Of a stretch of 64,000 bases of DNA, positions 3,801 to 58,400 are shown piece by piece. The stretch spans positions 6,138,001 through 6,202,000 of the forward strand of contig CATNEN010000024.1 of the NCBI GenBank assembly GCA_950097015.1, read 5' to 3'. Both the position numbers and the translations under genes were made by a program. Source of the DNA: Macrostomum hystrix (lineage: Eukaryota > Animalia > Platyhelminthes). Under the pieces are notes generated by a model. It had not been told where the DNA came from, searched no databases, and saw only the letters and a program-made list of their open reading frames with translations. Numbering within the stretch: position 1 is the stretch's first letter; each line of letters starts with the position of its first letter.

Positions 3801-4240
3801 GAGAATATTAAGTATTTAGAAAGTAGAATCTAAAATCCCATGATGAAGGTAGAAGTGTGTGTGCAGGTACTGCAGTTTCACTGTCCGATTGCTAATATTG
3901 TGCCTGTTATTTAATAATTGCTGGCCCAGGCGAACACCTTCTCTGTCATGACATTTATATATTTTGTGAAAGCACAAATGAAGATAGAGGGCCCGTGACA
4001 AGCTTGAGCAGGTTGGCGAGCAGAATGTGAAGTGTGGAGAGCAGGAAAGAATTTGTTAGTAAATCAGAATGAAATTGAGGTGTCAGATGTGCAGGGTGCA
4101 AATAATCTGGCCAGGTGTTAAAGGTCTGCACTCAAGAATCCCCCAATAACACGCGGATCCCAAGAAGCCAAGTAATAATACAGTTGCACTACAGGATCAA
4201 ATGACCTAAGGATTAGTGGCCTGAAATGCTGCCACTTCAG

Positions 4241-15478: not shown

Positions 15479-16074
15479 GATGAAGCAAAGAATTGAGAAG
15501 ACACCGAGAGAACAAACAGATCTTACCTTCCTCCGTCATAGAGCTCATGTCCTCCCTGCACTAGACTCAGTTTTTGTAAAGAATTATTAATAAATTAATA
15601 ATTCGGTTAGCGCAGTAGTGAGTCCCATTGCGCCAATTTCCGTTGTCGCCCTCACTGTGTTGCCGCCGAAGCCGCCGCAGTCACCGAAGCTTCCGGAGCA
15701 TCGACACGCAGGTGGCATCAGCGAAACCGAAATTCTGCCAAATCTTTGCATGCATTGTCGGTCTTCTACCGACACTATCGTGTATCCTGTTGCTTAACCC
15801 TGGATTCTCTGGAACTGGTCCCGACTGTTCAGAATTTGTTCCAGGGACAGCTAGCCAATTGTTGACTGGTGCGGGCAAAAATCCAACCCACATACTCCAC
15901 GCACACAACCCTGGGCACCTCCTGATGACCTTTTCTAGGAAATGCACCGAATTTCGGCTAGCCCAGCTCGACTGTGCAATGCCTGTGCCTCCTAGACCAT
16001 GCTTTGACGTTCTTACGAGTGTGAAATCTGTGTCAGATAATGAGAAAAAATAATAAATGATTGTAAAATTATGG

Positions 16075-39087: not shown

Positions 39088-42000
39088 TCAAGGATCAGCG
39101 GGCAGCAGGCCGATACTGGCGGCGAACTCCAGCAAGGCCAGGTGGCAGAACACGTACTGCTCAGCTGTCTGGATGGATCCCGCCCGCTGCTCTCTCAGTC
39201 TGCGCACGGTTCCCAGAAGGTCGACCTCGCCGGTGTCCAGAAGGCGCCGCATGGCGATGTCGACGGTCAGGAAGGTGCCGGTGCGCCCGATGCCGGCCGA
39301 GCAGTGCACCAGGGTCGGGCCGCGGCGCTCCTCGGAGACCTGGCGGACGCGGTCGAGGAACTTCAGGAAGGAGCCGGCGGCGTGGGGAATGCCAAAGTCA
39401 GGCCAGCTGGTGAACTGCAGGTGCGTCACTCGCCTCTGAGAGTCGCGCTGTGAGATCGTCAGCTCGCTGATCACCACGTCGTCGAGTTCGTCGACCGAGT
39501 CGCACGTCACCGTCACGCCTCCGTGGCTCTGCGACTCGCCGGCCGTCTGCGGCCAGTACGCTGCGCACTTTGTCCGACGACCTTCAACCAGGCGCGTCGT
39601 CATGACGACCACCCCGACGTCGTTCTGCCAGACCATCGACCAGAAGTCGGACACCGTGTTCGGCAGGGGGCCCTGCGGATGGATGAGGTTTCGGTGGGTG
39701 AAGCGGGTCTCTCGGCTACAGAGGCTGAAGGGATTTGAGCGACTTGTGCAGTTAATGGAATTAGTGATTGCCATTGGTTTGCCACTAGAAAGATTGTTCA
39801 AGTTGGGAGGCTGACTGTAGCGAGAGGGTAGATGCCAGGTGCTATTGGAGGGAAGCGGCATGGCTGAGAAGCTCATGACCAGCTCACCTGAGTGCAGATG
39901 TAGGCGCGGGGTTGCTGGTAGCCGTCCACCCAGTTCGCGTGCACATAGTCGCAGGCGCCGCCCTTTAGCTGAACCCGGCTGGCGTCCAGGCAGGGCACGT
40001 CGGCGTACCGGTTCTTCTCCCTGTTTCGGCGGAACGCCTCGCAGGGCCGGTCGCCGCCCCGGTCCGGGCCCAGCTTGCTGTTGAACTCCTCCACCAGGCC
40101 CTCGCGCTGCATGGCGGAGATGCGGGCGGCGAAGGCGTTCAGGCCGGCGGCGCATCGCTTCTTGCTGCTGGCCGAGCAGTCTTCTTCAGCGGCATCACAG
40201 TCGGCGCCCCTGGCGCGGCCGTCGCCGCTGCGTTTCTTAGACGGCGAATTTCCGCCGCTGATTCCTTCGACGCCGCATCCGCTCTGCCCGTCAATGCTGG
40301 GCGAGCGCTTGCGGCTGGAGGAGCCGCCACTGCTGCCGCTGGCGACTAGCACTGAGTCCGTCATGCTGCCAACGCTGACATCGACCAGCCAGTCAGCACC
40401 GCCGCCGTTGCCAGCGCTACCTGTATCGTCAGTCAAGCTGCTGGAGTCGGAGACAGCGCTGCTGGACATGCAGGTGACAGCGTTGAAGCCGCAGCTTCTG
40501 TTGAAATAGTCGGCTGGCAGTGGCCTGCCCATTCGTCGGCAAGCCTCGCGCAGCCAAGCCCGATGATCATGCGGTCGTGTGCCGCCCAGACTGCGAGGCA
40601 GAGCCTCCGGTGGCAGGTGGGTTGCCATGGAGACGCCGTTGACTATGAATACTCGGTCACGCAACTTTTCCCGAACAAACATTCGCAGGACCTGGTCGGG
40701 TTTGAGATAAAAAGACAGTAGACGACATTAGCTTTTTACTGACGTATTTAACAATCAGTGTGACCACAGTGAATTTTATATAATTAAGCAGTACAATTTT
40801 TTCGCGCAGTACCTTGTTGCATAGTTTTTCAAGTAAAAAGTATGCCCTTTGAAAAGAAGTTATTTAATTTATAAAAATGTATATTTACTGATAAAATAAC
40901 CCTACCTTGAAAAGGGTAAATCTTTTTAAGGGTGTTGGAAATAGTGTCTTTATTAAGTAGCATTAGTAACATTGAAATCAGAGTCAACAAATATTCGATT
41001 AATTCTTTTTCGCTCCTGGCAACTTGGCACTTAGACTTTTGGCTTCCGTAGTTTGCTGGTCCCTCGCATCTGCCTTTTGGAGCATCTCCTGAGCCGCTTT
41101 TACCATCTCGTCAATCATTTTCAGCAAGCAGCTTCGTCATCTTGTTTCTTTGTCCTCTCGTTCACTTTCTCACGCTGCATGTCCAGCTTTCATCTGAAGC
41201 CATTGCATCATCGCTTTGCATTTCTTTGCCTTCACAAGCGCTTCAGCCTTTGCACGGGCATCGAAGCTGAGGCGCAACATTGAGTGGTCAACGGCAAAAT
41301 CTGATGGCTCTTTTCCAAAGGCCTTGAGCACAGATTTAATGGACAAAAAGCAATCCAGAGTGTAATCGGCCAGCTGGTTTCGCTGTGTTTTTGAGATTAT
41401 TGGAAACTGTTTGGAAAGTGTTAGCAGTGCGGAAGTGTCTGCTCTAGAAATTGGAGTCGTTCAAGTGTTCTATCTCGTAGAGCTGTTTCGATTCTATCGG
41501 CAATGGGTTTCAACTTGCAAGCTGAAGTCATTGGCTTACTAAAAAAACTCATTGAGAGCGTCCCACTGCTCTAGCACGCGCCGGACAACCGCAAGCATCT
41601 GCAGCCATTGAGTTTCTACTCGTCTAATATAGACAAGCTGGACCAGCTGCATTGCGTCCTGGCCAAAGTTTTATAGGCCAAATACATCCGCAATAGGTTA
41701 AAATTACAGTTTTAGTGCATATAGCATTATTTGAGTGCATTTAAAAAATAGTTGCGCAATTGAGAAGAAAACTAAAAACAGTGCAAAATACTATAATAGT
41801 ACAGGTGTGGTCACACTATTAACGATATTCCCCGGCAAACCGAACATCATTGCACACTTGCTACATACGAGAAGACAATTGATAAAAAACTGCGCAAATT
41901 AGATGGATTGCATAGCAAAACCGGCTGGCAAATTCTAAAGGTAAATTGCTAGGCGACGCAATAACTATAATCGTAGATGTTAAAGTGCAGCCAAACGTAC

Positions 42001-45000
42001 TATTTAGACTTGTTAGCTACTTAAAACTTTTAAATGTGTCTACAAATTTTTTACTAACTTATGCGTGTTTAGTAGTCATCTGAAAGGGCAGAGTTCTTGT
42101 TGCATCTCCATTTGCCGGTCATTGTTATAATACGATAAGTTTCAGTTTCCTTGATTTTCATATTCCTCTATTGCTCGTTTGAAACAACCTTCATTACCTA
42201 TGAAGGCATTACCTTACCTTCAACCTATCACATTTAAAGTGATTTTTTGAAGTGGCTAAACAGGAGCGAGATCAGCTCACAAATATTTTCCACAGTGGGG
42301 GCTAAAGTTGCTAGTCAAATATACTAAAAATGCTTCTAGCCGTCCTACTTTTGTCTGGCATGCAAGTGGAACTACGAAATAAAGCAGATTTCTTATTTTT
42401 AACTCATTAAGAAAAGCAGGATGAATAGCCGAAACGTGAAATTTTAGACTCAGGTATTTGCGAAGAAGTACGGTTGGTTACACGAGATAAACCAACAGTG
42501 AAAAATCACCATGTGCTTTTTCATAGTTGTCGGTCATTTTTTGTGTACTCGCCGGACTTTTGAGTGACAGCACATTTCAAAGGACAATGAATAGAGGCGA
42601 CAAAGAATTAAAGTAAGGCCATTTTTAGCGATCTAGATTTCTCTTGATCGCTCAAAATGAGAATTTCGTCGCATTTGTCTATCAGAAATTCAATACACAC
42701 AGGCATAAAAAGGTCTAAAAGACACAAGCGTTTTGTTTTTGCTTTATTATGTGGTGACCACACACGGACTCTTCCCATAACATAGCGACTATCAGCAGAG
42801 CTCTAGAAAGGCGACTGATAAAGTTTTGGTAGATATGCCGACATTTCCGTGATACGCAACAGTCTGCAACAAACGATTGCAGGGAGGTCGTCGTCCGGGT
42901 TTATTGTGTGCCATACACTCTCAGCAAGGTCATAGTTTACTGATTTCAGTTTCTATTAGAACTGTCTATCTCAAAGTGGAAAATCAAACAATGTTGTTTC
43001 AGCAGTTCATCAATTAACAAATCTCCCCTCAAAACGCATCAACTAGATGGTGCTTTAGGATCGCGAGCATGATCAGTGTCCCACTGACACCACCATTGGT
43101 CAGAAGAGATCTACGCATTGCTGAGGCTTCCATGGTTATCACAGTGAAGAAATGCTTTTCTACTCTTCCAAATCTTCATTAAAACGGCAAGGCTCGTCTG
43201 CCGCTTTAACGTACGAGCTGTTTTAAGTAAAACGATTGACTTTACCACTATGACTATTAGGACCAATAGGACTAACGTTGCAGTGACGAACATTGTCGCC
43301 AGAGATAATGAGCATTATCTTTTGCATGCATATGATCGTAATAGACTGCAAAAGATTGAGTTTTACGAGTAATATACGAGTATATGAGCACATATAAGAT
43401 TGCTCACTCGAAAATTATTTCGTCTAAATTCGCTGGCGCCTAATTGAACGAACGAACGGATAAATGACTGGTAAAGTTTGAGATTATTTAACTGACTGAG
43501 CAGGGCATTGCTAGTAACGCATAAATACACTTAGTTAAGTAAGGCCAGAGTTACAAAGTGAATCAAGTGGAGGCAGAGCTGAGTTGAACGTACTCTACTT
43601 TCAGAAGTACATGCCTGGGAGGATTAAGCGATGGCAATGACAGTACAGCCCAAATAGACCTGCGATTGAGCCATTTAATCACAAAAGCTTTCATCATCAT
43701 AGGAAATAGCTTTCCATCTCAGCCTTGCAACTTATAAAAAGCCCTTCTAAGATGGAAAAATGAATCCTTCGTACTTTTCTCTCCAGCCCTTCTGAGATAA
43801 TTGAGCAAGTAGCGAGAAGGCTATATGGCCTCTATAAGTTAAGGCTGGTCAGATTATAGAATTGACCGCCAATAATAATATATGATTAATTTATTAAAAT
43901 AGATTTCGACTTCTATAGCGCATTCGGGTTAGCTGCACCAAAAATACCATTCGGAGTAATCAGTACTAAAACTTTATTTCCGAGAAAATAGCTTCAGCAC
44001 AACTTCTGTGCGATAAATATAACAACGCTGAGAAAATAGCGTCACATTATACAGCTCTAGAATATTTTGTACCAAATATGACAAAGGCCAGAACGTTGCA
44101 GTCTCTCTCATTCTCTGATGGTATTGAGTTTTTTCTTTCATTTTCTCTCTCGCCAGATTTTATTAACGCGCTTACCTTCTTAAACTAGAATAATTGTTCA
44201 GAGGCAAAAGTTAATCGTCAAGCTAACATTTAAGCACTCTCAAACTTTATAATGCAGTTTTTTATTTCTACTCCGGATTTCGCTTTTCACGCAAACCGGC
44301 TGCTGACTGGAAAGTTGTGAATACTGACGGGAAGGTTGTGAATACTGACTGGAAGGTTGTGAATACTGACTGGAAGGTTGTGAATACTGACTGGAAGGTT
44401 GTGAATACTGACGGGAAGGTTGTGACTATTGACTGGAAGGTTATGAATACTGACTGGAAGGTTGCGAATACTGACTGGAAAGTTGTGACTATTGACTGGA
44501 AGGTTGTGAATACTGACTGGAAGGTTGTGAGTACTGACTGGAAGGTTGTGAATACTGACTGGAAGGTTGTGAGTACTGACTGGAAGGTTATGAATACTGA
44601 CTGGAAAGTTTTGAATACTGACTGGAAAGTTGTGAATAATGACTGGAAAGTTTTGAATACTGACTGGAAGGTTGTGAATTCTGACTGGAAAGTTGTGAAT
44701 ACTGACTGGAAGGTTGTGACTACTGACTGGAAGGTTATGAATACTGACTGGAAGGTTGTGACTACTGACTGGAAGGTTATGAATACTGACTGGAAGGTTA
44801 TGAATACTGACTGGAAGGTTGTGACTACTGACTGGAAGGTTATGAATACTGACTGGAAGGTTGTGAGTGCTGATTGGAAGGTTATGAACACTGACTGGAA
44901 GGTTGTGAATACTGATTGGAAGGTTTTGAATACTGACTGGAAAGTTGTGAATACTGACTGGAAGGTTGTGAATACTGACTGGAAGGTTGTGAATACTGAC

Positions 45001-47327
45001 TGGAAGGTTGTGACTACTGACTGGAAGGTTATGAATACTGACTGGAAGGTTATGAATACTGACTGGAAGGTTGTGACTACTGACTGGAAGGTTATGAATA
45101 CTGACTGGAAGGTTGTGAGTGCTGATTGGAAGGTTATGAACACTGACTGGAAGGTTGTGAATACTGATTGGAAGGTTTTGAATACTGACTGGAAAGTTGT
45201 GAATACTGACTGGAAGGTTGTGAATACTGACTGGAAGGTTGTGAATACTGACTGGAAAGTTGTGAATACTGACTGGAAGGTTGTGAATACAGTTACGATT
45301 TTTATGATTGAACTGATAGATTTATAAAATTCGATCAGAGGCCTATGTCTAGTAATTAAAACCAGGGTTATTTAAAATGAAAGTACTCTTACTCCAAGTT
45401 ATAAATTCCAGAAACCGAATCAGGTATTTAGGTGAATCAAACCATCGCATATAGTTTAAAAGTACAAACAGAAAGGCAAACCAGAAAAGGCGCACATACA
45501 TCACTGGGTTTAGACTTATAATTAAATGCATGAAATCTAGCTAGCTAGCTGGACAATTTGTATAAATAGGAAAACCTGTGAATAGGAAGACCCGGCATTT
45601 TAAAGTCGGACAAAAATTGTCTTATGTGGTTGATAATTTTGGATACTTGTCCATGCGTTTCGATGCCAAGTGTTTAGCTGGACAACGTCTAACAGATGCA
45701 AATACACCCTAAACTAGAACATTCGGGCTCCAAGCCATCCAACCCACAGCAGTTGCCGGTACCTGTACCCAATGCAGCGTTTCCTGTGTACCTGTGCCGC
45801 ACCTGCCAGTCAAACAGTCTATCCGCGACTGCAATGACATGCTTAGCCAACTGTGCGGTAAAACTAAATCTAGTTACACACCAACTCGATTAAGCTGCGC
45901 ATGGGAATACGACATTTCTTGGGGGGGTCAAAAACCGCAACATTGTAGAGTCCAGAAACAAAGAAAACTACAGATTTTTTAAGCTAAAATTGAAAACTAA
46001 AATTTAAAGCTACTGTCAAGCCCTTTTGCCGCTTGTTCTTATACCAAGGGGATTCCCCCCTGACATTTTTTGGCAGCGCCTGAATGCTAAAAGCGTTAGG
46101 TGGTGACTGATTGGTTGACGGACAAGGCAATGGTGTCCTGTGGTTGAGCTGCGCCTAAAATTTAGGCTTGATCAGTAAAATTGGAGAAATTTGCATTACG
46201 GTGTCAATTGTGGCCTTCTTCCACCTGTTGTAGCCCATGAAGGTCCAGCAGTCCGTCTAGATAAAGGTAGGTGACCACCGAAGACGGAGATGATGCATGC
46301 ACATTCGGGTGACATGCTGATAAATTTTGAAGGCCTAGCAAGGCCGCACTGAGGCGTAGTGCTAATTCGTGCATAGGGGTGTATGAAATACACTAGCTCT
46401 TATGGAAAAATCTGACTTTCGCCAGAACCATTGAATATCTCGGCGGTACGAAGAGCTGGCGACTTGATTCTTGTTTCAGAAGATGCGCAACAAAATGTTG
46501 GCCCGTGATCTTGAGTTTAGTGTGCATGCATTGTTCCGTTCGGGTGCAGCGCAAAAATGTGTCAGGGGGGACGGGGGGAATTCCCCCACGGTAGTTCTAC
46601 TGTTAACCAGCGCAGTCTTAAGCTTAGTGGAAATCGGACCTCTCGTGATGTCGTAATTTATTGGAAAGCTGTCATTTTACAGTTTATCAAAATACAAGCT
46701 AATAGAAATAACTCAATTCAATACTCATATGACAGAAACGAAACTTACCTGGAATGGAGCCTTGAACCAGATTGGCGCGGTAACAATGAGCACCTTTTTT
46801 AATCTAGCCGGGTAATTGCCTTTGAGCATGTTTAGTATCTTAATGCTGAGATCGTAATCAAAGTTGCTATACTTCGATCCAGTCATGTCGTAGACAAACA
46901 CCAGGCCGTTCTCCTGTGCGGATTCCACAGCCAATGCTGCGTCTAATTGAAAGACGAGGCTCTTCAGAGTGTCCCTGTGCGTGGTCTCCGGCGGCCTGTG
47001 CCGACAGGCGGTGAACAGGGCTACTACGGCGTCGCTGGAGCTGAGGCCAGGCACAATGGTGAGCTTCTCGGACAGCAGCTCGGCCCGGACGCCTTCGTCG
47101 CAGGGATCGATGTGCTCAAAGCACTCTAGCCGGCGCAGTTTCTCGTGGGCGGCGAATAAATCAACGGCCCGCTGGGCGTCCCACTTTCGAGCGCGCAGAA
47201 ACTTCAAAGCCACCGTACGCTGCTGCGAGTCGGATAGGTGACGCAGCCGATCAGCGCACCTGGTAATCAGCCGCACCCGATCGAAGAAGTCCTGCACAGC
47301 CTGACATTGTTGAGGACGGTTGGTCAT
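39088..47327 (-). CDS. PTPN9: PTPN9/PTP-MEG2-like phosphatase (N-terminal Sec14/CRAL-TRIO + PTP domain). Exons 47327-46749, 40691-39888, 39672-39088; ~655 aa
   Basis: ALKFLRARKWD, LVFQLDAAL...QENGLVFVYDMTGSKYSNFD, YPARLKKVLIVTAPIWFKAPF (MEG2-type Sec14); KNRYADVPCLD, DYVHANWVDGY, YICTQ|GPLPNT..DFW, WPDFG, HCSAGIGRTG, QTAEQY. Both introns are GT-AG, phase 0. Confidence 0.93.
41100..41690 (-). mobile_element. Degenerate hAT-like transposase relic in PTPN9 intron 1
   Basis: Minus-strand fragments ETQWLQMLAVVRRVLEQWDALNEFF (cf. TRWLS...RVLEQW.AL..YF) and KTQRNQLADYTLDCFLSIK (cf. KTRNRL...TL..LL.IK). Confidence 0.55.
44303..45290 (+). repeat. 21-bp tandem repeat (ACTGACTGGAAGGTTGTGAAT)n, ~47 copies, in PTPN9 intron 1
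   Basis: Source of the TDWKVVN / TTFQSVF ORFs. Confidence 0.97.
45850..46616. mobile_element. Possible decayed MITE
   Basis: Imperfect inverted repeats: CCCCCTGACATTTTTTGGCAGCGCC (~46056) vs GGTGCAGCGCAAAAATGTGTCAGGGGG (~46543), and ACTGTGCGGTAAAAC vs GTTAACCAGCGCAGT at the ends. Confidence 0.3.
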
Positions 47328-50209
47328 TGTGCTACTCCTACATCATCTGCTCACTGTCACTAGCTTTAGTGCTTTCTCTGGCATCAGACACAACTATCTC
47401 CCAATCTATCAAATCCTGTTAGTTTTTTCCCTGGCATCAGACTCAACCATTTCCCAATCTAGCAAGTAAAGTTAGTGTTTTCTCTGGCAATTAAAATCTT
47501 TTTAAGGCTATATTGCTGACTAGTAACATTGCTAGAAAATTGTTTGGTAGGCATCGTGCCAACTGACTAGCTAAAATACAATTACTATGGTAGCAGCTAA
47601 AATACTATCTACATTGTAAACAATCAATAATTCCATAATTTTTATGTTAACATTTTGGATATGTCTGTCTTTTGCCAGTTGCAAGAAACTATATGTCAAG
47701 TTATTTAAATGTGTTCATTTAAAGACTAAAATAAACTAGTAAAAAGTAGGCTAAAAGCTATACCTAATTCAAGCCTCAAACAATTATTATGTACTAGCAT
47801 TTAGGAGATCTAAGCATTGGCTGTACCCATGATGTCCCATTTTTTAAGGAAAGGAAACATTTAAAATATGATAAAAAAGGCCTATAAGACTTGGATTTCA
47901 ACCAGAACCCAAAATTAAAAGCCCAAAAAAAGAAAAATCCTACCTATGCATCTATGCCCACAGTATTTATGCAAATAAAAGAACTATACTATCTCAAAAG
48001 TTTTATTATTCACATAAAGGTATAAAAAATCCAAAATAGAATGCAATTCTGCACTTTCAAGGTCTAGCAACTAAAATATAACACAATTTTGCAAAGCTAA
48101 TACAAAACAATTTGCTAACTATTATCCAGAGTACAGATCCCATAATATATACCCAAAAATACATACATTAGTATGTTGCACCAGATTTTGCCTACATGGT
48201 TGGTGCATGCTACTTGCTATATACCAAATGATTGCATACATGATCAGTATGCCTTTGCCACAAACTGAATTATTGACATCTATGCTTAGTGTTAAATGTA
48301 AGTAAAATGGACATAGAAGGCACTAACAGTGACAAGTAAACAAGGTTGTTGACAAGATAAAATTTTCTTAGGCCTAGTGCCAAAAATTAACCACATAATT
48401 TTTGGACTATAGGCAATTGATGTTCAAGCTTTATAAGACATAATTTTTTGGCATGAATTATACAGTTTAAGGCATGCAAAATTAACATTTTAGCCTACAT
48501 TAAAGTCCAGACATTTTAGACATACAATCAGTAGGATTATGGTTATAGGCTACATTAGTTACTAGGCCTGAGCACAAAAAAATATAACCATATTTTGTAG
48601 TCTTAATTTTTTTTAACTTTGTTAAACAAAATCCACTTTTATTTTTTTAATAATGCACTTTTGTTAGTAACAAAATCATCTATGATAAAAATGATTAAAT
48701 GAAGAAAAAACTCTCATCATGAATGGATGGACTATTATGACTTACTAGATAAAAAACGATGTTCTTAAACTGTTCCCAATATGCATAAGAGAAAAACAAA
48801 TACATCTTGATACTGGTTGGACTAGGCTATATACAGAGTAGGGCCTATTACAACCCTTATGGGCATTTATTGGCTAAATTTTATATTGAAATTTTCAATA
48901 ACTATATAGGTAGCTAATGGCAAAACAAGAAAACAAACTTAAATATGTAACAATTATTCAATATATTTTTAAAGCAAAACAACCACAAACTTACGGTTTC
49001 TTCACTTCTGCTTAATTTCCTTTCTTCGGTGTCTTCACATACACAATACCACAAGCTTATAGAACTGTTCTGTGACATTTAGCTATTTTCCGAACAAAAT
49101 AAAGAATATGTTTACAAGTAATGCAAACAAGTAGGTGGTGTAGTGTATATTTAGGATTGCCTAGAACTTCTGGTCATAGCTATCCGAATTTAATCCCTAG
49201 AGCCTATTAGCTTGACTACGCCTAGCTAAGAGAAGCCAGTCCGGCGAAAAGAAAAGAAACTGTAATAATATGGGAATCAGTAAGCCTGGCAAATCTGTTC
49301 CAATGACCAAGACGCAAAAGTTAATAAATATTTTATTTTACATGCAATGTCACTTAAGACGCTCATTAAAAATATGATTTTATACGAGTGAAACTATTAC
49401 CAGTTAGTTTACACAAATTAGTCAAGTGTAAGTCGAATGTGAACTTAACTGTCGCATTAACGCATTAATTAAAACGAAACATAAAATTTAAGCTTCAATG
49501 AAATTTCAAGCGATAGAACTTTCGTAAAGGAACCAACAAATGCTCAAAATATTTATCTTGACTACACTATTCGCTTTTTATTACCATAAGCGCGTATTAG
49601 TGCATCATATCTCTAATGTAAAGCCTAGCTACATTTATAAAGATTTGTTATATTTTTTATAAGGCTCAAACGATATTTCAAAACAAAAATATTCCATGAA
49701 TCGATAACCTAGGTCCTTAGTACTACAGTTTTTAGTTCAATTAAGATTAAGATTTTCCTTACGATATACTTATTCTTTTCAGCAGCATAACAAAAGCGCC
49801 GTGTTAAATTGCATGAATTTAGGAATACAGAATTGAAGACACAAATAAGAAAACTCGACAAGATTATACCTTTTGTATTAAAAAGTATATACTTACAGAT
49901 TAACCTTAGACAATTTTAACATGAAGCATTTTAGTGTAGCAGCTGCTTGTAGTTCAATCCCAGACTTCCCAGATATTTTTTAATTCACTGTTAAAAAACA
50001 GACACCCACACACATGTGTTTTTAGCAAAGCTACTTGTACATCACTATTTTATTTGAATAAAAAATGTTAGTTATTGTCAACAATGATGCTTACTCCTTG
50101 TTTAAATATTGCTCTACCGAAAATAGTTGTTAGAACCGAAAATTGCTGTTAGAACCAACAACAATCTTGCAGTCATATGGTAGTATAAATTTATAAGTTA
50201 CAATCCCTT

Positions 50210-50516
50210 ATTATTATTATTTTAATACACCTGCCCTAATTGCGACAGATGCGTAGCCGACAGCAGAGCCGCGGCTATTACAGTGCGCATCTGAAGGCTG
50301 CGTACAAATTTTCAGTCCATGGACTGGGAGGACCCAACACCCACCCTCAATTACCCCAGCTAATGCTGGTACCCATTTCACAGCTGGGTGAACTGTAGCA
50401 ATGCAGAGTTAAGTGTCTTGCTAAAGGGCACATATTGTTCCCGTAAAGTCAGGAATCGAACCCCCGACCTTCAAGTCATTATTCCGACGCTCTAACCACA
50501 AGGCTACAACCTCTCC
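50210..50516 (-). mobile_element. Full-length tRNA-derived SINE, family 2, with CORE-like central domain
   Basis: Minus strand: A box TAGCCTTGTGGTTAGAGC, B box GGTTCGATTCC, then GTGCCCTTTAGCAAGACACTTAACTC...CACCCAGCTGTGAAATGGGTACC (resembles the MIR/CORE domain GTGACCTTGGGCAAGTCACTTAACC...CATCTGTAAAATGGG), (AAT)n tail. Confidence 0.88.
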
Positions 50517-50634
50517 TTATATAGGTTAGACTGAGTGATATCCAGTGTTGAGTTTTGTGAGCACTGATGCCTTATTTACCTCATTAAAACATATCAGGTT
50601 TCGAATTAAACCCGATCATGCAGCTCTTAAACAA

Positions 50635-51914
50635 ATGCACTTAAACACAAGCGCAAGACGAAATGTAACAAATAATGATCTTCAGTATCGCCGTCTCCAT
50701 TACGCGACAGCGACGCTGTCTATTGGATTTGCACTTGGCATTGGTCTTCTGACAGCCTACAACAAATGCCAATATGCAAGCGACACTTCATCCATATGTT
50801 GGTGGGACACCAGAAAAGCTCACAGAGACGACCTTACAATATCAGCCTTCGCCGCCCGCATCTCCGCCATGCAGCGCGAGGACCTGGTGGAGGAGTTCAA
50901 CAGCAAGCTGGGCCCGGACCGGGGCGGCGACCGGCCCTGCGAGGCGTTCCGCCGAAACAGGGAGAAGAACCGGTACGCCGACGTGCCCTGCCTGGACGCC
51001 AGCCGGGTTCAGCTAAAGGGCGGCGCCTGCGACTATGTGCACGCGAACTGGGTGGACGGCTACCAGCAGCCCCGCGCCTACATCTGCACTCAGGTGAGCT
51101 GGTCATGAGCTTCTCAGCCATGCCGCTTCCCTCCAATAGCACCTGGCATCTACCCTCTCGCTACAGTCAGCCTCCCAACTTGAACAATCTTTCTAGTGGC
51201 AAACCAATGGCAATCACTAATTCCATTAACTGCACAAGTCGCTCAAATCCCTTCAGCCTCTGTAGCCGAGAGACCCGCTTCACCCACCGAAACCTCATCC
51301 ATCCGCAGGGCCCCCTGCCGAACACGGTGTCCGACTTCTGGTCGATGGTCTGGCAGAACGACGTCGGGGTGGTCGTCATGACGACGCGCCTGGTTGAAGG
51401 TCGTCGGACAAAGTGCGCAGCGTACTGGCCGCAGACGGCCGGCGAGTCGCAGAGCCACGGAGGCGTGACGGTGACGTGCGACTCGGTCGACGAACTCGAC
51501 GACGTGGTGATCAGCGAGCTGACGATCTCACAGCGCGACTCTCAGAGGCGAGTGACGCACCTGCAGTTCACCAGCTGGCCTGACTTTGGCATTCCCCACG
51601 CCGCCGGCTCCTTCCTGAAGTTCCTCGACCGCGTCCGCCAGGTCTCCGAGGAGCGCCGCGGCCCGACCCTGGTGCACTGCTCGGCCGGCATCGGGCGCAC
51701 CGGCACCTTCCTGACCGTCGACATCGCCATGCGGCGCCTTCTGGACACCGGCGAGGTCGACCTTCTGGGAACCGTGCGCAGACTGAGAGAGCAGCGGGCG
51801 GGATCCATCCAGACAGCTGAGCAGTACGTGTTCTGCCACCTGGCCTTGCTGGAGTTCGCCGCCAGTATCGGCCTGCTGCCCGAAGAGAACAGGACTAAAT
51901 ATGCGCTGGTTTAA
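50635..51914 (+). CDS. Chimeric PTP: 70 novel residues with a hydrophobic helix + duplicated PTPN9 catalytic domain + 10 novel residues. Exons 50635-51093, 51309-51914; ~354 aa
   Basis: 50845-51882 is the reverse complement of 39099-40136, including the 215-nt intron; KNRY, WPD, HCSAGIGR and Q-loop intact. Expression unknown, so it could be a young gene or a pseudogene. Confidence 0.7.
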
Positions 51915-52469
51915 TCAAATTATATCAACAAAGACTGCATTGTTCTTAGTTTTATAGCAAACTATGTTTCGTTTTCAATGTGGTACATTGCGCACACCTT
52001 CTTTCTTAAGCTTTCTTAAGTCATGCTTGTGCCAAATTTATATCGTCCGTTATGCTATTGACACTTTAATTTATAGAGGTTACGCTCGGCTACGAAAGAT
52101 CCACTAATTGAGGATAGTTTTAAAGAAAAATATTCATTCGTTTTGTAGTTTGTTGAAAGGATTTCGAATCTTAAAATAGGACTGTGGTTTTATTTGCGAC
52201 ACTCCATTTGTTTTATTTTGATCGGTTGTTGAACGCAAGCGATAGCTTAGGTTCCCAGGAGCAAGTAAAGTAATGGTTGTTCACTTTCATACGAGCAGCT
52301 TAGTAGTAGAAATGCGGAAGAATCGAAGTATCGAAACGAGAAAGAATCGCTTCGAAATCTCCCATTAGCAAAAGAAGGCAAAGCTAACGAAGAAAAGTGA
52401 CTGAAGCTATCAGAGTCCCAAGGTTTCCGCAGCGGCTTCCTACTAGGTCATTTCATGCGGCTAGTTAAG

Positions 52470-55400
52470 CTACCGTAGCCGCACCCCCGCCTTGGTCATG
52501 ATTCTGCGAGCCACGGAATCGTCAGCGTGACTAAATATGCAACGAAAATCCTGCATGCCAGCCAGTCGCTTCGTTGACTGACCGCGACCAGTCCTCTGTA
52601 AGATCTCCACAGCCAGACAGATGCTCTCCTCTACCGCCTGCGTGACAACTCGTTCCAGGGTTGCGGTCTGCTTGCTCAGCGACGGATCCGAGTTCAATTC
52701 GAGCAGCCACACGTTGAAATCGGCGCCGATTAAAAAGTCGCAGCCCAACAGTTCGTAGGACATTGGCTGCTCGCACAGGGAACTACTAGCCAGCGAGACA
52801 ACGTGGGCTAAGATTGCGCGAATTCTCTGATACAAGCGCCGCTTGACCCAGTTATGGCACGGCGCGGTCAGTTCTCGACTATGCTGATTGATGTAGTCGT
52901 TGAGCTGGTCTGGCGTCCACACCGTGTCCTCCTTGACAGTCTCGAAGGCTGGGTCTCGCCGCTGCACCGCCTGGTTGGTGAGATGCAGCAGCGGATCGTC
53001 ACTATCGGCCTGATAGGGACGGCAGGCCAGTCTGACATAGCCGGGGTGGCAGAATGCGTACAGTCCGCACTGTTCTACGCTGCACAGATTGGGCACTAGC
53101 AGTAAGTACACGCGCAAATCAAATTTTCGACCTTCCAGAAGCAACGGCTGCTGAATGTAGCGCTGAATGATGAGATCCCGGTGCTGGTAGTCGGGAAATT
53201 TCGTCTCCAGCAAGGCAACAATGCTGGCCAGAGCCGCTCCCGTGCCGCTGTCTTTCAGTGGCGGCACTCGGTGGAGAATGATGCCCTCCCCGCAGTCAGC
53301 GTGTCCGGGCTTCAACAAGAACAGGCCGCTGTCGTCACGGCCTAGCATTGAGGTGCGTTACACAGTGGAGAGATGAGACTGTGGAGAAATGCGACTGTGG
53401 AAAGAATAGACAGAGGAGAGATGAGACAGAGGAGAGATGAGACTGTGGAGAAATGCGACTGTGGAGAGATGAGACAGTGGAGAGATGAGACTGTGGAGAA
53501 ATGCGACTGTGGAGAGATGAGACAGAGGAGAGATTAGATTGTGGAGAGATGAGACTGTGGAGACATGCGACTGTGGAGAGAATAGACAGAGGAGAGATGA
53601 GACAGAGGAGAGATGAGACAGAGGAGAGATGAGACAGGAGAGATGAGACTGAGGAGAGATGAAACAGAGGAGATATGAGACAGAGGAGAGTTGGAGGGAC
53701 TGGAGAGATGACACAGGGGACAGATGGCACGAGGGAGAGATGACATAGGGGAGGGATGACACAGGGGGACAGATGACACGAGGGAGAGATGACACGGGAC
53801 AGATGACACGAGGGAGAGATGACACGGGACAGATGGCACGAGGGAGAGATGACATAGGGGAGGTATGACACAGGGGGACAGATGGCACGAGGGAGAGATG
53901 ACACAGGGGACAGATGGCACGAGGGAGAGATGACACAGGGGACAGATGGCACGAGGGAGAGATGACACAGGGGACAGATGGCATGAGGGAGAGATGACAC
54001 AGGGGACAGATGGCACGAGGGAGAGATGACACAGGGGACAGATGGCATGAGGGAGAGATGACACAGGGGACAGATGGCACGAGGGAGAGATGACACAGGG
54101 GACAGATGGCACGAGGGAGAGATGACACAGGGGACAGATGGCACGAGGGAGAGATGACACAGGGGACAGATGGCATGAGGGAGAGATGACACAGGGGACA
54201 GATGGCACGAGGGAGAGATGACACAGGGGACAGATGGCACGAGGGAGAGATGACACAGGGGACAGATGGCACGAGGGAGAGATGACACAGGGGACAGATG
54301 GCATGAGGGAGAGATGACACAGGGGACAGATGGCACGAGGGAGAGATGACACAGGGGACAGATGGCACGAGGGAGAGATGACACAGGGGACAGATGGCAC
54401 GAGGGAGAGATGACACAGGGGACAGATGGCACGAGGGAGAGATGACATAGGGGAGGGATGACACGGGAGAGATTACACATAGGAGAGAAGACACAGGGGC
54501 GAGCGAGTGGAACCTAGCATACAGGCCTAGAATAGACTAGCTTACGAATGAAATCAATGATGCTGGTGGCGCTGGAGCCGTTAAGGTGCATTGTGTCCGG
54601 AAAGAAGCTTGACGCTTCAAGGCCTTTCGGCACCAGGTAGGGGTGATTGAGCTCAAACTCCTTCAAACACCTGGCCAGGCTGCACTTGTTGGCTAGGAGG
54701 CCGCGAAAATGCAATCGGTTAATGATGTAGTAGCCTGACAAATGGGGGTGGGCGACTGACCAGTTAGTAATTAAACAGCATGCACCAACATGACAGGAAA
54801 ACTAGCGTTGTTCATAGAAATACTTTAAAATTAGAGTAAGCGCACTGCTGGCCTGACTAGATTTCTGCTTCACTTTGGCATAATGTTTACGATATTACGA
54901 TATTCAAAATTACAATACCACAATATAATTGACAATACAAATAATGTGATTTTATGCGCAAGATTATTAATAAAATGAGACTTCGAGGTTACGATTTGAA
55001 AGGCTAGAAAACACTCCAGCCCTGCTTCGGGCCTCTAACTGTAGATTATATTATATTATTTGATAGGCTAGGACAAAAGGGGTCGACAGCGAGAAGAAGA
55101 CAAATGAACCCTAGGGTGATGTACATTGTGGGGGCTAACAGACGACAACGAGCGCATAGGGAGAGAAAAACAAGGTGGGGGCAGGGGGTCTGGACTAGAC
55201 TGGAGGGGTCAGAGTGGAAAGGGACACGGGGAAAATCGATAATAGAGAGCAAAGGGTGGAGCTGGCAAATAACTGGGGTTAGAAAATGAAATTACCCCAA
55301 GGGTGTACAGTGAACAGGATTGGTTAACATTGGATTAACAACATTTTTCCCCTTGAAAACTTTTCGTTCTGAGTGTTTTTTTACTTTCACTTTTGCTTTC

Positions 55401-58400
55401 ATTTTACGCCTTTTCAATTAGGTTGTTAAGTGCCTACTCGCAGGTGCAATTAAAAATAAAATTAAATTAAAGTCTCTTTTGAGTGCCCACTTTATAATAA
55501 AAAAAAATAATAATAGTAATATTTACCCCCTGGGGAAATACCCACTGCTGCCTACTTCACCATAGCTCCCAAACCGAATGACCGATTTTTGTGAAAATCC
55601 TGCTTTTGGATCGAAAAATAGTTGAATATCATGGCGATTGGTTGAATAGTTTAGACGATACAGAAATGCGGGTTTTTGAAAGACCCCGTCGTCTTTCGTC
55701 TTTCCACAAGTAAAAAGTTTAGACCGATGACAACCTTCAGACAGTGGGATACATAACTGAGAAGCCAATTACAATATACTTGTCTCACATACCAAGGCCG
55801 GGCTTTCTCATCGCTCCAGAATTTGTGCCACTGCACCAGAGCAGGGCCATCCTGTCCAGCGGCCTGAATTTGTTGCGTACATCACCTGGCAGCTGCTCCT
55901 TGAAGCCCATGGCATTGAGCATCTTGCGACAGCTGCAATGTACGGAACATTGTTCAAGTGTTTACTTCCTGAATGAAATAATTGTCAGATTTAAATATAT
56001 ATATATTAGTTCAAAAGATAATTAAGCCTGCCCCATTTGGGCCAGATGTGCAGCCGACAGCCCACTTTTAGTCATTATATGGTGCATCTGAAGGCTGCGT
56101 ACGGTTGATCAGTCCATGGACTGGGGGACGCCACACACACCCTCAATTACCCCAGCTGATGCTGGTACCCTTTTAACAGCTGGGTGAACTAAAGCAACGT
56201 GGACTTTAGTGTCTTGATAAAGGAAGTACCAATTTTCAAAAATAATAATATTATTACGAGTATAATAATACGCAACCCCCCGGCGACGCCGTGGCCCGAA
56301 AAATAGGGGAAGCGTCAAAACGCGCTTCAGGGCTAGTTTGCGGACATGTTTCACTCCGTCAGCCTGGCTCGGGGCACGGGCGTCGGAGTAGAGCAGGTCG
56401 ATGTAACGGGCCGATCGTCCTTGTCCGCGCCTGGGCGGTCCTTCAGAGTCCACAGAAGCACATCCTGCAGCGGCTTAGGGCAGTAGGCTTCAACCCTGAT
56501 CACGTGCCCAGCCAGCCGCAGGCGCCGCTGTCTCAGCAATCAGGTCAGTCGCGCTCGCTTGTACAGTGAGTCGGTCGTCTCGCTTCCTGGACCGCGGCGG
56601 GCGCCAAACGCAGAGCGAAGCAGGGCCGCATGTGTCGCGTTGAGCTGCCTCTCGAGCGCCTCCGTCAGAGTCCAGGTCTTCGCATTATAGAGCAGCAGGG
56701 TCTCAACGACCGCCTGGAAGAGCTGCGACCTGGAAGAGCTGCGACCTGGATGAGCTGCGTCCGTCAGCGCGCCCGAAAGCAGCACCGTGCACACCGATCG
56801 GAGGGCCTTGCCGCGCCGTCTCGCCAAATCGTCGTTTACGTCCGTCCGGCTTTACTCCGCCGAGACTCGTAAACGAACTGGCGGCACCTCGGAAGCGGGT
56901 TCCTGTGGCCGCTGTCGTCCCGGAGCAGAATCTCGGCCGGCAGGTTGTGCGGCACTGTCAGCACCTCGGTCTTCTGCTCGTTCACGATGAGACCGACTCT
57001 CACCGCCGCCTTTGTCAGGCCATCCAGCACAGGTCCAGCACAGGCTGTAACCGTGCTAAAAGCATCCGGTTGAACAGCTTCGACATAAGCGAAATCCCGC
57101 GATGTTCCTCCATCCATGTGGTGCCCGACTTCTTCAGGATTCCGACGCTGATCAAGTGGGCAAAAGTCCACTCGAAAGGCGCAGAACCTCCTGCCAAGAC
57201 CCCGATCATCACGCGGGTCACCTCAGTGGCGACCCTCGGGACTTGCAACGCTTCGGCGGGCACTTCGTCAGGGCCGGGGGCGCCCGGAATTCTGCGAGCG
57301 AACTCCACTACGTCAGTGCTGGTGAAAGGACGGATGTCGAAATCTTCCTGCTTCGGCAGTGCTACCTCAGGGGACAGCGATAGGTCAGCAGGCAGTGACG
57401 GCGACGGCGCATTGACAATGGTGGTGAAGAAACAGCGCAGCATATTTCTGTGCTCCTCCGCAGAGTCACCAGCCAGGTTTAGCGCCGCCTTTTTCTTACG
57501 ACCAGTAAGGGCATTTACGGCCGGCCGGACGACTCGGTTTTTTCCCATCAAGACCGACTGACGCGATTTTCAAGTAGTGAGTCCGATCGCTCTAAAGGCT
57601 AGGCTACAACCCCCCCAACCCCTCTGAAGCCTAAACAATTAATTTATATTTATCTCACCCTAAGACCTAAGACCTAAGACCTATCTCACCCTGTATCTCG
57701 TCCTATTCCTGGAATGACACACCCTACCCTCACATCCTATTCCTGGAATGACACACCCTACCCTCACATCCTATTCCTGGAATGACACACCCTACCCTCA
57801 CATCCTATTCCTGGAATGACACACCCTACCCTCACATCCTATTCCTGGAATGACACACCCTACCCTCACATCCTGTTCCTGGAATGACACACCCTACCCT
57901 CACATCCTGTTCCTAATAAAGACTTACAGGGGATTAGGGATTAGTGACTTACACCTGGTGTCTAGGGCACCATTTGCTATTTTATGTTAGCCATAAAAAT
58001 CGGACTTTTTAACGATCTTTTGCCCGACATATAGGTAGCATAATAACAAAATAGTACAATAACTTAACCATATTACGTTTGATCAAGTCACTATAAAATA
58101 TTAGAGAGATAATATACTCACTGTGAACTGCCGTGATTGTATAAAATGTAGTACTCGCCGCGCAGTGACGAGTACCTCTCTCGGAATGCACGACCTCGCG
58201 CCTCTGTGTCGTAGGAGTCGGAGACGAGTGATCGTCGGCTCGTCATTGGCCCGGTGGGGATCACGATCTGCCTGTCGATTGAATCACCGTGGAGCACGTC
58301 ATTTACTTTTGTCACTTCTGACGCGCTAGAGTAGCTAAAGATCGCGTTGGTGCAGGCCACGTCGTCAAGATTGGGTAAAGGAACATTTTCTGCGAGTTTT

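What the first reader, a model, noticed from the sequence alone, without database searches (positions are those of the whole stretch)
50635..51914. Newborn chimeric phosphatase: PTP domain copied in frame into a small ORF with a hydrophobic helix, replacing Sec14
Seen: 50845-51882 (1038 bp) is an inverted copy of 39099-40136, i.e. essentially the PTP catalytic domain of PTPN9 including its 215-nt intron, so the copy was made at DNA level and is not a retrocopy. I noticed only two differences (GGC>GAC, G>D; synonymous CAA>CAG), so it is very recent. The 5' junction is in frame with an ATG at 50635 that gives 70 new residues, including RR-LHYATATLSIGFALGIGLLTAY. Removing the insert (a single G is shared by both junctions) restores one continuous 80-codon ORF ...DDLTIS-EENRTKYALV*. 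Established: in PTP-MEG2 the Sec14 domain binds lipids and governs localisation and activity; all catalytic motifs are intact in the copy. Inference: a lipid-regulated PTP has been converted into a possibly membrane-anchored, unregulated PTP by insertion into a pre-existing microprotein gene. Same-phase junctions have a 1-in-3 chance, and RR before the helix could put the PTP on the luminal side.
Basis: partly seen in the sequence, partly recalled or inferred. Interest (0 to 1): 0.85.

Follow-up and report, generated by a model that had tools for sequence, protein, structure and literature searches.

The report
Young expressed PTP-domain partial gene duplicate
A Macrostomum flatworm recently copied the catalytic half of its PTPN9/MEG2 tyrosine-phosphatase gene, intron included, into the spacer just upstream of that gene, where it borrows a start and stop from non-coding DNA and is transcribed and spliced; this is a clean but ordinary example of how new genes begin.

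Summary
50845-51882 is an inverted copy of 39099-40136: 1038 nt, two mismatches, sharp edges. It is not an assembly artefact. DNA contigs of run X1 cross both junctions at flank depth, with no empty-site branch. One RNA-like contig of X2 runs left flank, junction, spliced-out intron, junction, right flank. A contig from a second study (X5) crosses the 5' junction.

The genome is a Macrostomum flatworm. The parent is a 674-aa Sec14+PTP gene, and the copy equals its residues 398-671, a complete catalytic domain with all motifs. The copy lies head-to-head 1.56 kb upstream of the parent's ATG. M. lignano has no copy in that spacer.

The "pre-existing microprotein gene" is not supported. The host ORF has non-coding-like GC3 (0.37-0.40 against 0.62-0.94) and no homologue in two very large protein searches. 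The hydrophobic helix is borderline, and charge bias would put the PTP on the lumenal side.

Best reading: a very young "partial duplicate with recruitment". The scan's first readers flagged other chimeric genes in this genome, but not this one.

The parts
50845..51882 (+). Inserted copy: the 3' 249 nt of parent exon 3, the 215-nt intron, and parent exon 4 minus its last 3 codons. This is the complete PTP catalytic domain, parent residues 398-671.
   Evidence: 1038 nt, 2 mismatches; Pfam Y_phosphatase positions 1-48 and 49-234; aligns to residues 20-307 of the 314-residue human PTPN9 catalytic-domain chain 2pa5_A.
39099..40136 (-). Donor segment inside the parent PTPN9/MEG2 orthologue.
39088..49078 (-). 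Parent gene, 674 aa, Sec14/CRAL_TRIO + linker + PTP. Coding exons are 49078-48995, 47300-46749, 40691-39888 and 39672-39088.
   Evidence: tblastn of M. lignano P0001 and a splice-aware model, 81.6% identity; Pfam CRAL_TRIO and Y_phosphatase.
50635..50844 (+). Recruited 5' coding stretch, 70 codons from ATG 50635 (frame open from 50539). It contains the marginally hydrophobic segment LHYATATLSIGFALGIGLLTAY.
   Evidence: GC3 is 0.40. No homologues. uATGs at 50567 and 50618 precede it.
50680..50685 (+). CTTCAG, a candidate 3' splice acceptor; the exon would start at 50686 in codon phase 0 of the host frame.
   Evidence: X5 contig 19 fits 50685-50874 and carries 22 further letters that do not fit the window. 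The site matches the [T/C]TNCAG trans-splice acceptor motif of M. lignano (PMC8629364). The identity of the 22 letters was not seen.
51094..51308 (+). Inherited GT..AG intron (215 nt), removed in RNA-like contigs.
   Evidence: Contigs of X2, X5 and X9 skip 51091-51305; the few-base offset from the intron coordinates is alignment ambiguity at the splice boundary. The intron is identical to the parent intron.
51883..51914 (+). Recruited 3' tail: with G 51882 it reads EENRTKYALV plus stop TAA (51912-51914).
51915..52169 (+). 3' untranslated stretch as far as the X2 transcript contig reaches. It has no canonical poly(A) signal on this strand and abuts the 3' end of the convergent TTL mRNA.
50206..50515 (-). 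tRNA-head SINE with an (AAT)n tail, immediately upstream of the open frame. The X2 transcript contig breaks inside it.
   Evidence: k-mer depth 1e5-1e6 in X1; 83% to L001:2238-2532.
52470..53348 (-). Last coding exon of a tubulin-tyrosine-ligase-like gene, convergent with the new gene. Its AATAAA is at 52189-52194 on the minus strand.

Best explanation
This is a real, very young, DNA-mediated partial duplication. About 1,037 bp of the 3' end of the PTPN9/MEG2 orthologue was copied once: the whole catalytic domain with its intron, stopping 3 codons before the stop. It was pasted in inverse orientation into the TTL-PTPN9 intergenic spacer, 1.56 kb upstream of the parent's own start codon. The most likely route is break repair or replication template switching, because the junctions are blunt or share 1 nt, there is no target-site duplication, and there are no terminal repeats. 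The insert happened to land in frame in a stop-free stretch of non-coding-like DNA. That DNA supplies a start (ATG 50635, or a 5' exon or spliced leader joined at acceptor 50686) and, because the spliced insert is 274 codons, a 10-codon tail and a stop. In Katju's terms this is a 'partial duplicate with recruitment'. Shown: the locus is transcribed on the + strand and the inherited intron is spliced. Inferred: the mRNA can encode a 354-aa stand-alone PTP domain lacking the Sec14 lipid-binding and targeting domain. Whether it is translated, membrane-bound or useful is unknown. My estimates are about 50% that a protein is made and 20% or less that it is a cytosol-facing membrane-anchored PTP.
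For: The repeat and its two mismatches are.

Junction support in DNA contigs of X1: 50486-50874 at depth 89 and 51853-53300 at depth 76 each run exactly k-1 = 30 nt into the repeat with no branch at the insertion point. Neighbouring flank depth is 70-76. The insertion is therefore present and homozygous in that sample.

Transcript support: one 1470-nt X2 contig covers 50485-51090 plus 51306-52169, which spans both junctions with the intron removed. X5, from another study, has a contig crossing the 5' junction.

The intron is GT..AG only on the + strand.

Synteny: M. lignano contig L001 has TTL then PTPN9 in the same order and orientation. Its spacer is 1.67 kb with no second PTP copy and no match to the host ORF.

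The host ORF looks non-coding: GC3 is 0.37-0.40 against 0.62-0.94, and it has no homologues. An in-frame upstream ATG-ORF of 70 or more codons occurs at about 1.8% of random non-genic positions in this window. That is rare but not extraordinary for a scan of many windows.

The domain is complete and its motifs are intact.

This class of duplicate is common among young duplicates of C. elegans and Drosophila (PMC3449122).
Against: Only contigs were available, not raw reads. The X2 contig could in principle be a graph path that mixes the parent's spliced k-mers with flank k-mers.

In X5 the right flank 51883-52155 has no cover. The X5 PTP contig runs past 51882 into 1391 nt unlike the window. 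The 3' junction is therefore seen in RNA of one study only.

The repeat contig in X1 has about 2.8x flank depth rather than 2x, so a third copy may exist.

A 102-codon stop-free stretch in front of the junction has an empirical chance of about 2%, which leaves room for a real host gene.

Near-identity could reflect gene conversion between the inverted repeats rather than youth.

There is no canonical poly(A) signal on the + strand, and two uATGs precede ATG 50635.
Confidence: 0.72

Rival explanations
1. One reading: the PTP domain was inserted into a pre-existing, functional microprotein gene with a transmembrane helix, converting a lipid-regulated PTP into a membrane-anchored one.
For: The empty site reads as one continuous ORF, 80 codons from the ATG and 112 stop-free codons. 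The flanks are transcribed. A CTTCAG acceptor at 50685 appears to be used in X5, which suggests an organised transcription unit. A stop-free stretch this long has only about a 2% chance.
Against: GC3 of 0.37-0.40 is unlike any real exon in the window. There is no homologue in 5.8 billion or 1.84 billion proteins; the single hit, P0121, is a translated tandem repeat that matches 12 of 30 residues seven times. The Atlas recognition score is in the range of shuffled sequences. Nothing comparable lies in the M. lignano spacer. The helix is borderline, and the positive-inside rule would put the PTP on the lumenal side.
Confidence: 0.12
2. A dead-on-arrival duplicate. The DNA copy is real, but its RNA is incidental: divergent transcription from the parent's promoter, SINE-driven transcription, or read-through near the TTL 3' end. 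No stable protein is made, and the copy will decay.
For: Two short uORFs precede ATG 50635, and no canonical poly(A) signal follows the stop. The X2 contig abuts the TTL 3' end. X9, labelled as a different organism but with near-identical PTP and TTL exons, shows no flank cover. With only two substitutions there is no signal of selection.
Against: The ORF is fully intact and the intron is correctly spliced. Flank depth in X2 (49) is comparable to TTL (83), and in X5 the 5'-junction contig (35) exceeds TTL (9-11). The stop is in the last exon, so no nonsense-mediated decay is expected. Three of the four coding differences seen among samples and copies in the PTP part are synonymous.
Confidence: 0.3
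3. An assembly artefact: a mis-join or a duplicated read placed in the contig.
For: The copies are near-identical and inverted, which is a pattern some long-read artefacts produce.
Against: Both junctions exist in short-read-derived contigs at single-copy depth in X1. They are also in RNA-like contigs of X2, and the 5' junction is in an independent 2020 study, X5. The copy lies 10.7 kb from the donor and is not a fold-back.
Confidence: 0.02
4. Transposon-mediated gene-fragment capture (Helitron, Pack-MULE-like or similar), or a retrocopy.
For: A SINE lies 330 bp upstream, and repeats are abundant in this genome.
Against: The intron is retained and there is no poly(A) tract, so it is not a retrocopy. 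There is no target-site duplication and there are no terminal inverted repeats at the junctions. The immediate flanks 50516-50844 and 51883-52470 are unique in the window.
Confidence: 0.03

Closest known systems
Partial gene duplicates with recruitment, and chimeric duplicates, of C. elegans and Drosophila (Katju & Lynch; Katju 2012 review, PMC3449122; classic cases jingwei and Sdic, cited from my own knowledge)
   Same: A DNA-mediated, short-span (about 1 kb), nearby duplicate covers only part of the parent ORF. The derived copy takes new coding sequence and regulatory context from its landing site. The outgroup has a single complete gene.
   Different: Here both the N-terminus and the C-terminal tail are recruited. 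The copy is inverted and sits in the parent's own upstream spacer, head-to-head with it. It is caught at 0.2% divergence with transcript evidence.
PTPN9 / PTP-MEG2 (human; Drosophila Meg2)
   Same: The catalytic domain is PTPN9-type. Best hits are PTPN9 orthologues at 45-52% identity and the M. lignano orthologue at 84%. It aligns to the 2pa5 catalytic-domain structure.
   Different: It lacks the N-terminal CRAL_TRIO/Sec14 lipid-binding domain that defines MEG2 and targets and modulates it (PMC2213338). It has 70 unrelated residues instead.
Templated-insertion or template-switch repair products (FoSTeS/MMBIR; ectopic templated insertions at double-strand breaks; from my own knowledge)
   Same: A nearby segment is copied in inverted orientation, with 0-1 nt microhomology at the junctions and no duplication of the target.
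   Different: The mechanism is inferred from junction anatomy only; nothing here observes the event.
PTPs anchored by hydrophobic segments (STEP61/PTPN5 N-terminal hydrophobic regions; PTP1B C-terminal tail anchor; from my own knowledge)
   Same: A single catalytic domain joined to a short hydrophobic segment.
   Different: Those anchors are clearly hydrophobic and leave the domain in the cytosol. Here the segment is marginal and the charge bias predicts the opposite topology.

Membership tests
Classical protein-tyrosine phosphatase (Pfam PF00102) | Full-length match to the Y_phosphatase domain | tested here: met
   Profile positions 1-48 (exon 1, 1.3e-14) and 49-234 (exon 2, 5.7e-64). Covers residues 20-307 of the 314-residue chain 2pa5_A.
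Classical protein-tyrosine phosphatase (Pfam PF00102) | Catalytic motifs: KNRY pTyr loop, WPD loop, HCX5R P-loop, QTxxQY Q-loop | tested here: met
   KNRY at residue 111, WPD at 243, HCSAGIGR at 276, QTAEQY at 321 of the 354-aa product.
Classical protein-tyrosine phosphatase (Pfam PF00102) | Phosphotyrosine hydrolase activity | not testable with these tools
   Needs expression and a pNPP or phosphopeptide assay.
PTPN9 / PTP-MEG2 subfamily | N-terminal CRAL_TRIO/Sec14 domain joined to the PTP domain | tested here: not met
   The parent has it (46725-47327, CRAL_TRIO 6e-17). The new gene's N-terminal 107 residues match no Pfam family.
PTPN9 / PTP-MEG2 subfamily | Catalytic domain closest to PTPN9 orthologues | tested here: met
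   The top hits are PTPN9/Meg2 proteins, and M. lignano BOX15_Mlig010339g2 is 84% identical.
Partial duplicate with recruitment (Katju 2012) | The derived copy holds only part of the ancestral ORF, and the outgroup has the complete single gene | tested here: met
   The copy equals residues 398-671 of 674. M. lignano L001 has one complete gene and an empty spacer.
Partial duplicate with recruitment (Katju 2012) | Unique coding sequence is recruited from non-genic flank rather than from a second gene | tested here: inconclusive
   Non-coding-like GC3 and no homologues favour a non-genic origin. The empty site in a sister species was not available.
Retrocopy | Loss of introns, poly(A) tract, target-site duplication | tested here: not met
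   The 215-nt intron is retained and identical. There is no poly(A) tract and no TSD.
Single-pass membrane protein | A hydrophobic segment that passes standard transmembrane thresholds | tested here: inconclusive
   Kyte-Doolittle 19-residue mean is 1.52 (threshold about 1.6), and a buried PTP helix scores 1.60. The summed Hessa-type scale is +2.0 (scale values from memory). No dedicated predictor was available.
SL trans-spliced Macrostomum gene | [quoted passage not shown] | tested here: met
   CTTCAG at 50680-50685. X5 contig 19 leaves the genome there.
SL trans-spliced Macrostomum gene | Spliced-leader letters (…TTGCATG) on the transcript | not testable with these tools

The most novel reading that the evidence does not exclude
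The acceptor CTTCAG|TAT at 50686 is a spliced-leader trans-splice site. The Macrostomum leader ends in AUG, and 50686 is in codon phase 0. The leader itself would then donate the start codon, giving M-YRRLHYATATLSIGFALGIGLLTAY…, an N-terminus shaped like a signal peptide or signal anchor. In one mutational step, intergenic DNA plus a captured catalytic domain would become a secretory-pathway or ecto-tyrosine phosphatase. In addition, the two 1-kb inverted repeats may flip the 10.7-kb spacer and swap 3' ends between parent and copy. That would fit the X5 pattern, where the 5' junction is present but the PTP contig continues into sequence other than the window's right flank.
Probability: 0.12. 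Interest if true: 0.65.

Novelty: new member of a known kind. Interest (0 to 1): 0.42.

Why it matters
Young chimeric or partial duplicates are thought to be a main source of new domain architectures, but most are found long after birth. This one has 0.2% divergence from its parent, known breakpoints and a known donor. An outgroup carries the empty spacer. Transcript evidence spans both junctions. It sits in a flatworm genus that is a laboratory model with transgenesis and RNAi. It offers a tractable case for three questions. Is a catalytic domain stripped of its regulatory Sec14 domain tolerated, silenced or used? Does non-coding DNA immediately provide a working N-terminus? Does landing beside the parent's promoter give the copy its expression? 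As a kind of event it is well known, so it is a good specimen rather than a surprise.

Tried and rejected
Exact-product look-ups for the junction-crossing ORF pieces (window 50847-51881 and 50635-50874) found nothing on record. This species' proteins are apparently not in that collection, so the blank means little.

The only hit of the exhaustive search with the host ORF, P0121, is a translated tandem repeat. It matches 12 of 30 residues in seven repeats, and its E-value is inflated by the repetition, so I rejected it as a homologue.

The ESM Atlas gave no usable neighbour: score 0.75, with recognition below the level of real families.

ARAGORN finds no tRNA in the SINE head.

The whole-window repeat scan was swamped by a 33-nt satellite and added only that no other long inverted pair exists.

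The rival readings (transposon capture, retrocopy, assembly artefact) were each considered and rejected for the reasons given under rival explanations.

I could not fold or search the full spliced 354-aa protein, because it has no single reference. I analysed its two exons separately and did not type the sequence.

Full report
**1. Observation**

The repeat finder reports a single long inverted pair in the window, 39099-40136 against 50845-51882, 1038 nt. A base-by-base comparison gives exactly two mismatches and no similarity beyond either edge.
- In copy coordinates the mismatches are 50882 (copy A, parent G; GAC Asp against GGC Gly) and 51069 (copy G, parent A; CAG/CAA, synonymous).
- The M. 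lignano orthologue has Gly at the first site, so Asp is the derived state.
- The copy contains the parent's 215-nt GT..AG intron unchanged, so it was made from DNA, not from mRNA.
- The insert is about 60-69% GC, in flanks of 31-44% GC.

**2. Frame arithmetic**

ATG 50635 is in frame with the insert, and the frame is open from 50539. The repeat's last base, G 51882, can equally belong to the host. The net insert is then 1037 nt, which is 822 nt or 274 codons after intron removal. The spliced mRNA therefore keeps the host frame on both sides and ends …IGLLP-EENRTKYALV*. Removing the insert gives a continuous 112-codon stop-free stretch, 80 codons from the ATG.

**3. The duplication is real and expressed**

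I had one call each of the look-up of sequencing runs and read laying. All runs were available only as Logan contigs.

Run X1 holds 0.96 of the sampled words and has even depth over introns and spacer, so it is DNA and probably the source sample.
- Contig 50486-50874 (depth 89) and contig 51853-53300 (depth 76) each run exactly 30 nt (k-1) into the repeat.
- A third contig is exactly 50845-51882.
- There is no branch at the insertion point. No empty allele is visible, and the junction contigs have flank depth (70-76).

Run X2 is from the same study but another sample. It has no cover in the spacer or the intron, so it behaves as RNA.
- One 1470-nt contig covers 50485-51090 plus 51306-52169. 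That is left flank, 5' junction, intron removed, 3' junction and right flank.
- Its differences from the window are N4D, D83G (back to the parental Gly), two synonymous changes and one 3'-UTR change.

Run X5 comes from a different study, dated 2020.
- One contig crosses the 5' junction (50685-50874).
- It carries 22 further letters that leave the genome at the acceptor-like CTTCAG|50686.

The intron is canonical only on the + strand, and the acceptor is an AG only on the + strand, so transcription is sense to the chimeric ORF.

Caveats:
- Contigs can mix the parent's spliced k-mers with flank k-mers.
- In X5 the right flank 51883-52155 has no cover, and the PTP contig continues for 1391 nt into sequence unlike the window.
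- The repeat contig in X1 has about 2.8x, not 2x, flank depth.

**4. Organism and parent gene**

The best protein hit is Macrostomum lignano BOX15_Mlig010339g2 (P0001, 666 aa, CRAL_TRIO + Y_phosphatase), 84% identical over exon 2. All other hits are PTPN9/Meg2 orthologues at about 45-52%. An earlier follow-up note of this scan also calls this genome Macrostomum.

With P0001 as guide the parent model is 674 aa on the minus strand. Its exons are 49078-48995, 47300-46749, 40691-39888 and 39672-39088, and it is 81.6% identical to P0001. The copy equals parent residues 398-671. It starts where conservation with M. lignano begins, after a diverged linker, and ends 3 codons before the stop.

The copy covers residues 20-307 of the 314-residue crystallised human PTPN9 catalytic domain 2pa5_A. 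It keeps KNRY, WPD, HCSAGIGR and QTAEQY.

**5.

The new gene (50635 to 51914, + strand) lies between the 3' end of a TTL-family gene (stop at 52470, minus strand) and the 5' end of its own parent (ATG 49078, minus strand). It is head-to-head with the parent, 1.56 kb ATG to ATG, and tail-to-tail with TTL.

The M. lignano contig L001 has TTL then PTPN9 in the same order and orientation. Its spacer is 1.67 kb and contains no second PTP copy, no match to the flanks, and no match to the host ORF. The insertion is therefore specific to this lineage.

A tRNA-head SINE with an (AAT)n tail (50206-50515, minus strand) abuts the open frame. It is hugely abundant in X1 and also present in M. lignano.

**6. 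Is the host ORF a gene?**

The evidence points away from that.
- GC3 is 0.37-0.40, against 0.62-0.94 for the parent, TTL and TMTC exons.
- The word-indexed search of 5.8 billion proteins found no candidate.
- The exhaustive HMMER search of 1.84 billion representatives gave one hit, a translated tandem repeat matching 12 of 30 residues seven times over, which I regard as spurious.
- The ESM Atlas gave nothing, with a recognition score typical of shuffled sequences.
- Empirically, 1.8% of random positions, frames and strands in the non-genic parts of this window have an in-frame upstream ATG-ORF of 70 or more codons, and 2.4% have 100 or more stop-free codons. That is unusual but within reach of chance for a scan that selects striking cases.
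- Two short uORFs (ATGs at 50567 and 50618) precede ATG 50635 in the unspliced leader.

**7. N-terminus**

The segment LHYATATLSIGFALGIGLLTAY has a best 19-residue Kyte-Doolittle mean of 1.52, below a buried helix of the PTP fold (1.60). Its position-independent Hessa-type sum is about +2 kcal/mol, with scale values from memory. It is marginal as a membrane span.

Flanking charges are +4/-1 on the N-side and +1/-1 on the C-side. By the positive-inside rule the PTP domain would be non-cytosolic, where a classical PTP has few substrates and an oxidisable catalytic cysteine. This step is inference.

If the acceptor at 50686 receives the Macrostomum spliced leader, the leader's AUG would be in frame and give MYRRLHYATAT….
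- The M. lignano leader is 35 nt and ends …TTGCATG, and 20-30% of genes in the genus are trans-spliced (PMC8629364, PMC10468722).
- The acceptor motif [T/C]TNCAG is met here by CTTCAG.
- This remains untested, because the 22 letters were not shown.

**8. Mechanism of origin (inferred)**

The evidence against a retrocopy or transposon capture is:
- the intron is retained;
- there is no poly(A) tract;
- there is no target-site duplication and there are no terminal repeats;
- the immediate flanks are unique.

Blunt or 1-nt-microhomology junctions, together with an inverted copy of a segment 10.7 kb away, fit templated insertion during break repair or replication template switching.

Identity of 99.8% is lower divergence than the 5 differences in 1470 nt between X2 and the reference. 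The event is therefore very recent, or the copies are being homogenised by gene conversion. The 1-kb inverted repeats could also invert the 10.7-kb spacer, which would swap the 3' tails and UTRs of the two genes. The odd X5 pattern is compatible with that but does not show it.

**9. Comparison with known things**

As a phosphatase, the product is a complete PTPN9-type catalytic domain but not a MEG2-architecture protein, because Sec14 is absent. MEG2's lipid-binding domain binds and is modulated by phosphoinositides and is tied to secretory-vesicle function (PMC2213338).

As an evolutionary event, it matches the 'partial duplicate with recruitment' and chimeric-duplicate classes that make up a large share of young duplicates in C. 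elegans and Drosophila (PMC3449122).

**10. Verdict**

The 'pre-existing microprotein gene' and 'membrane anchor' parts are unsupported or weak.
- Novelty: a new member of a known kind.
- Interest is moderate, 0.42. It is a well-preserved newborn gene in a tractable model genus, but not a new principle.

Noticed in passing
window 50206-50515 (minus strand); also 56027-56223 and L001:2238-2532: A tRNA-head SINE with an (AAT)n tail. Its k-mer depth in DNA run X1 is 1e5-1e6 against about 73 for unique DNA, so it is an extremely abundant family. It is shared with M. lignano at 83% identity. ARAGORN does not call the head a tRNA.
   Followed up: partly
window 50845-51882, run X1: The collapsed repeat contig has depth 209 against 70-89 for both flanks, about 2.8x. 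This hints at a third copy of the PTP segment, or of the parent, elsewhere in the genome.
   Followed up: no
window 51883-52155, runs X5-X8: All four runs of the 2020 study hold about half of the sampled words. X5, the one run of these that was laid, has the 5' junction but no cover of the right flank, and its PTP contig runs on into 1391 nt of other sequence. Possible causes are assembler tip-clipping or an inverted arrangement of the 10.7-kb spacer in that stock.
   Followed up: no
window 50898-51882 and 52330-52598, run X9 (organism B): A run labelled as a different organism carries PTP and TTL exon sequence nearly identical to the window (0-1 differences per contig) but nothing from the chimera's flanks. 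It could be a very close relative lacking the expressed copy, or cross-sample carry-over.
   Followed up: no
window 33152-34594 (minus strand): The ORF holding the TMTC DUF1736 domain continues in frame for about 200 codons through a tandem repeat (…[15 protein letters not shown]… units). Either a satellite has expanded inside or next to a coding exon, or the open frame is a chance one.
   Followed up: no
window 4100-9300; 16000-19000; 44268-45327; 53335-54494: Several long satellite arrays with extreme strand skew: a 33-nt unit with more than 150 copies at 4100-9300, and an array reading as repeated TFQSVF-type units (44268-45327) inside the parent gene's large intron. All give long spurious ORFs.
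   Followed up: no
window 52141-52194: TTL mRNA contigs start at 52141-52156, just downstream of a minus-strand AATAAA (52189-52194). The X2 TTL contig carries 19 non-matching letters there, probably a poly(A) tail. The new gene's transcript contig ends at 52169, so the two 3' ends overlap by about 29 nt.
   Followed up: partly
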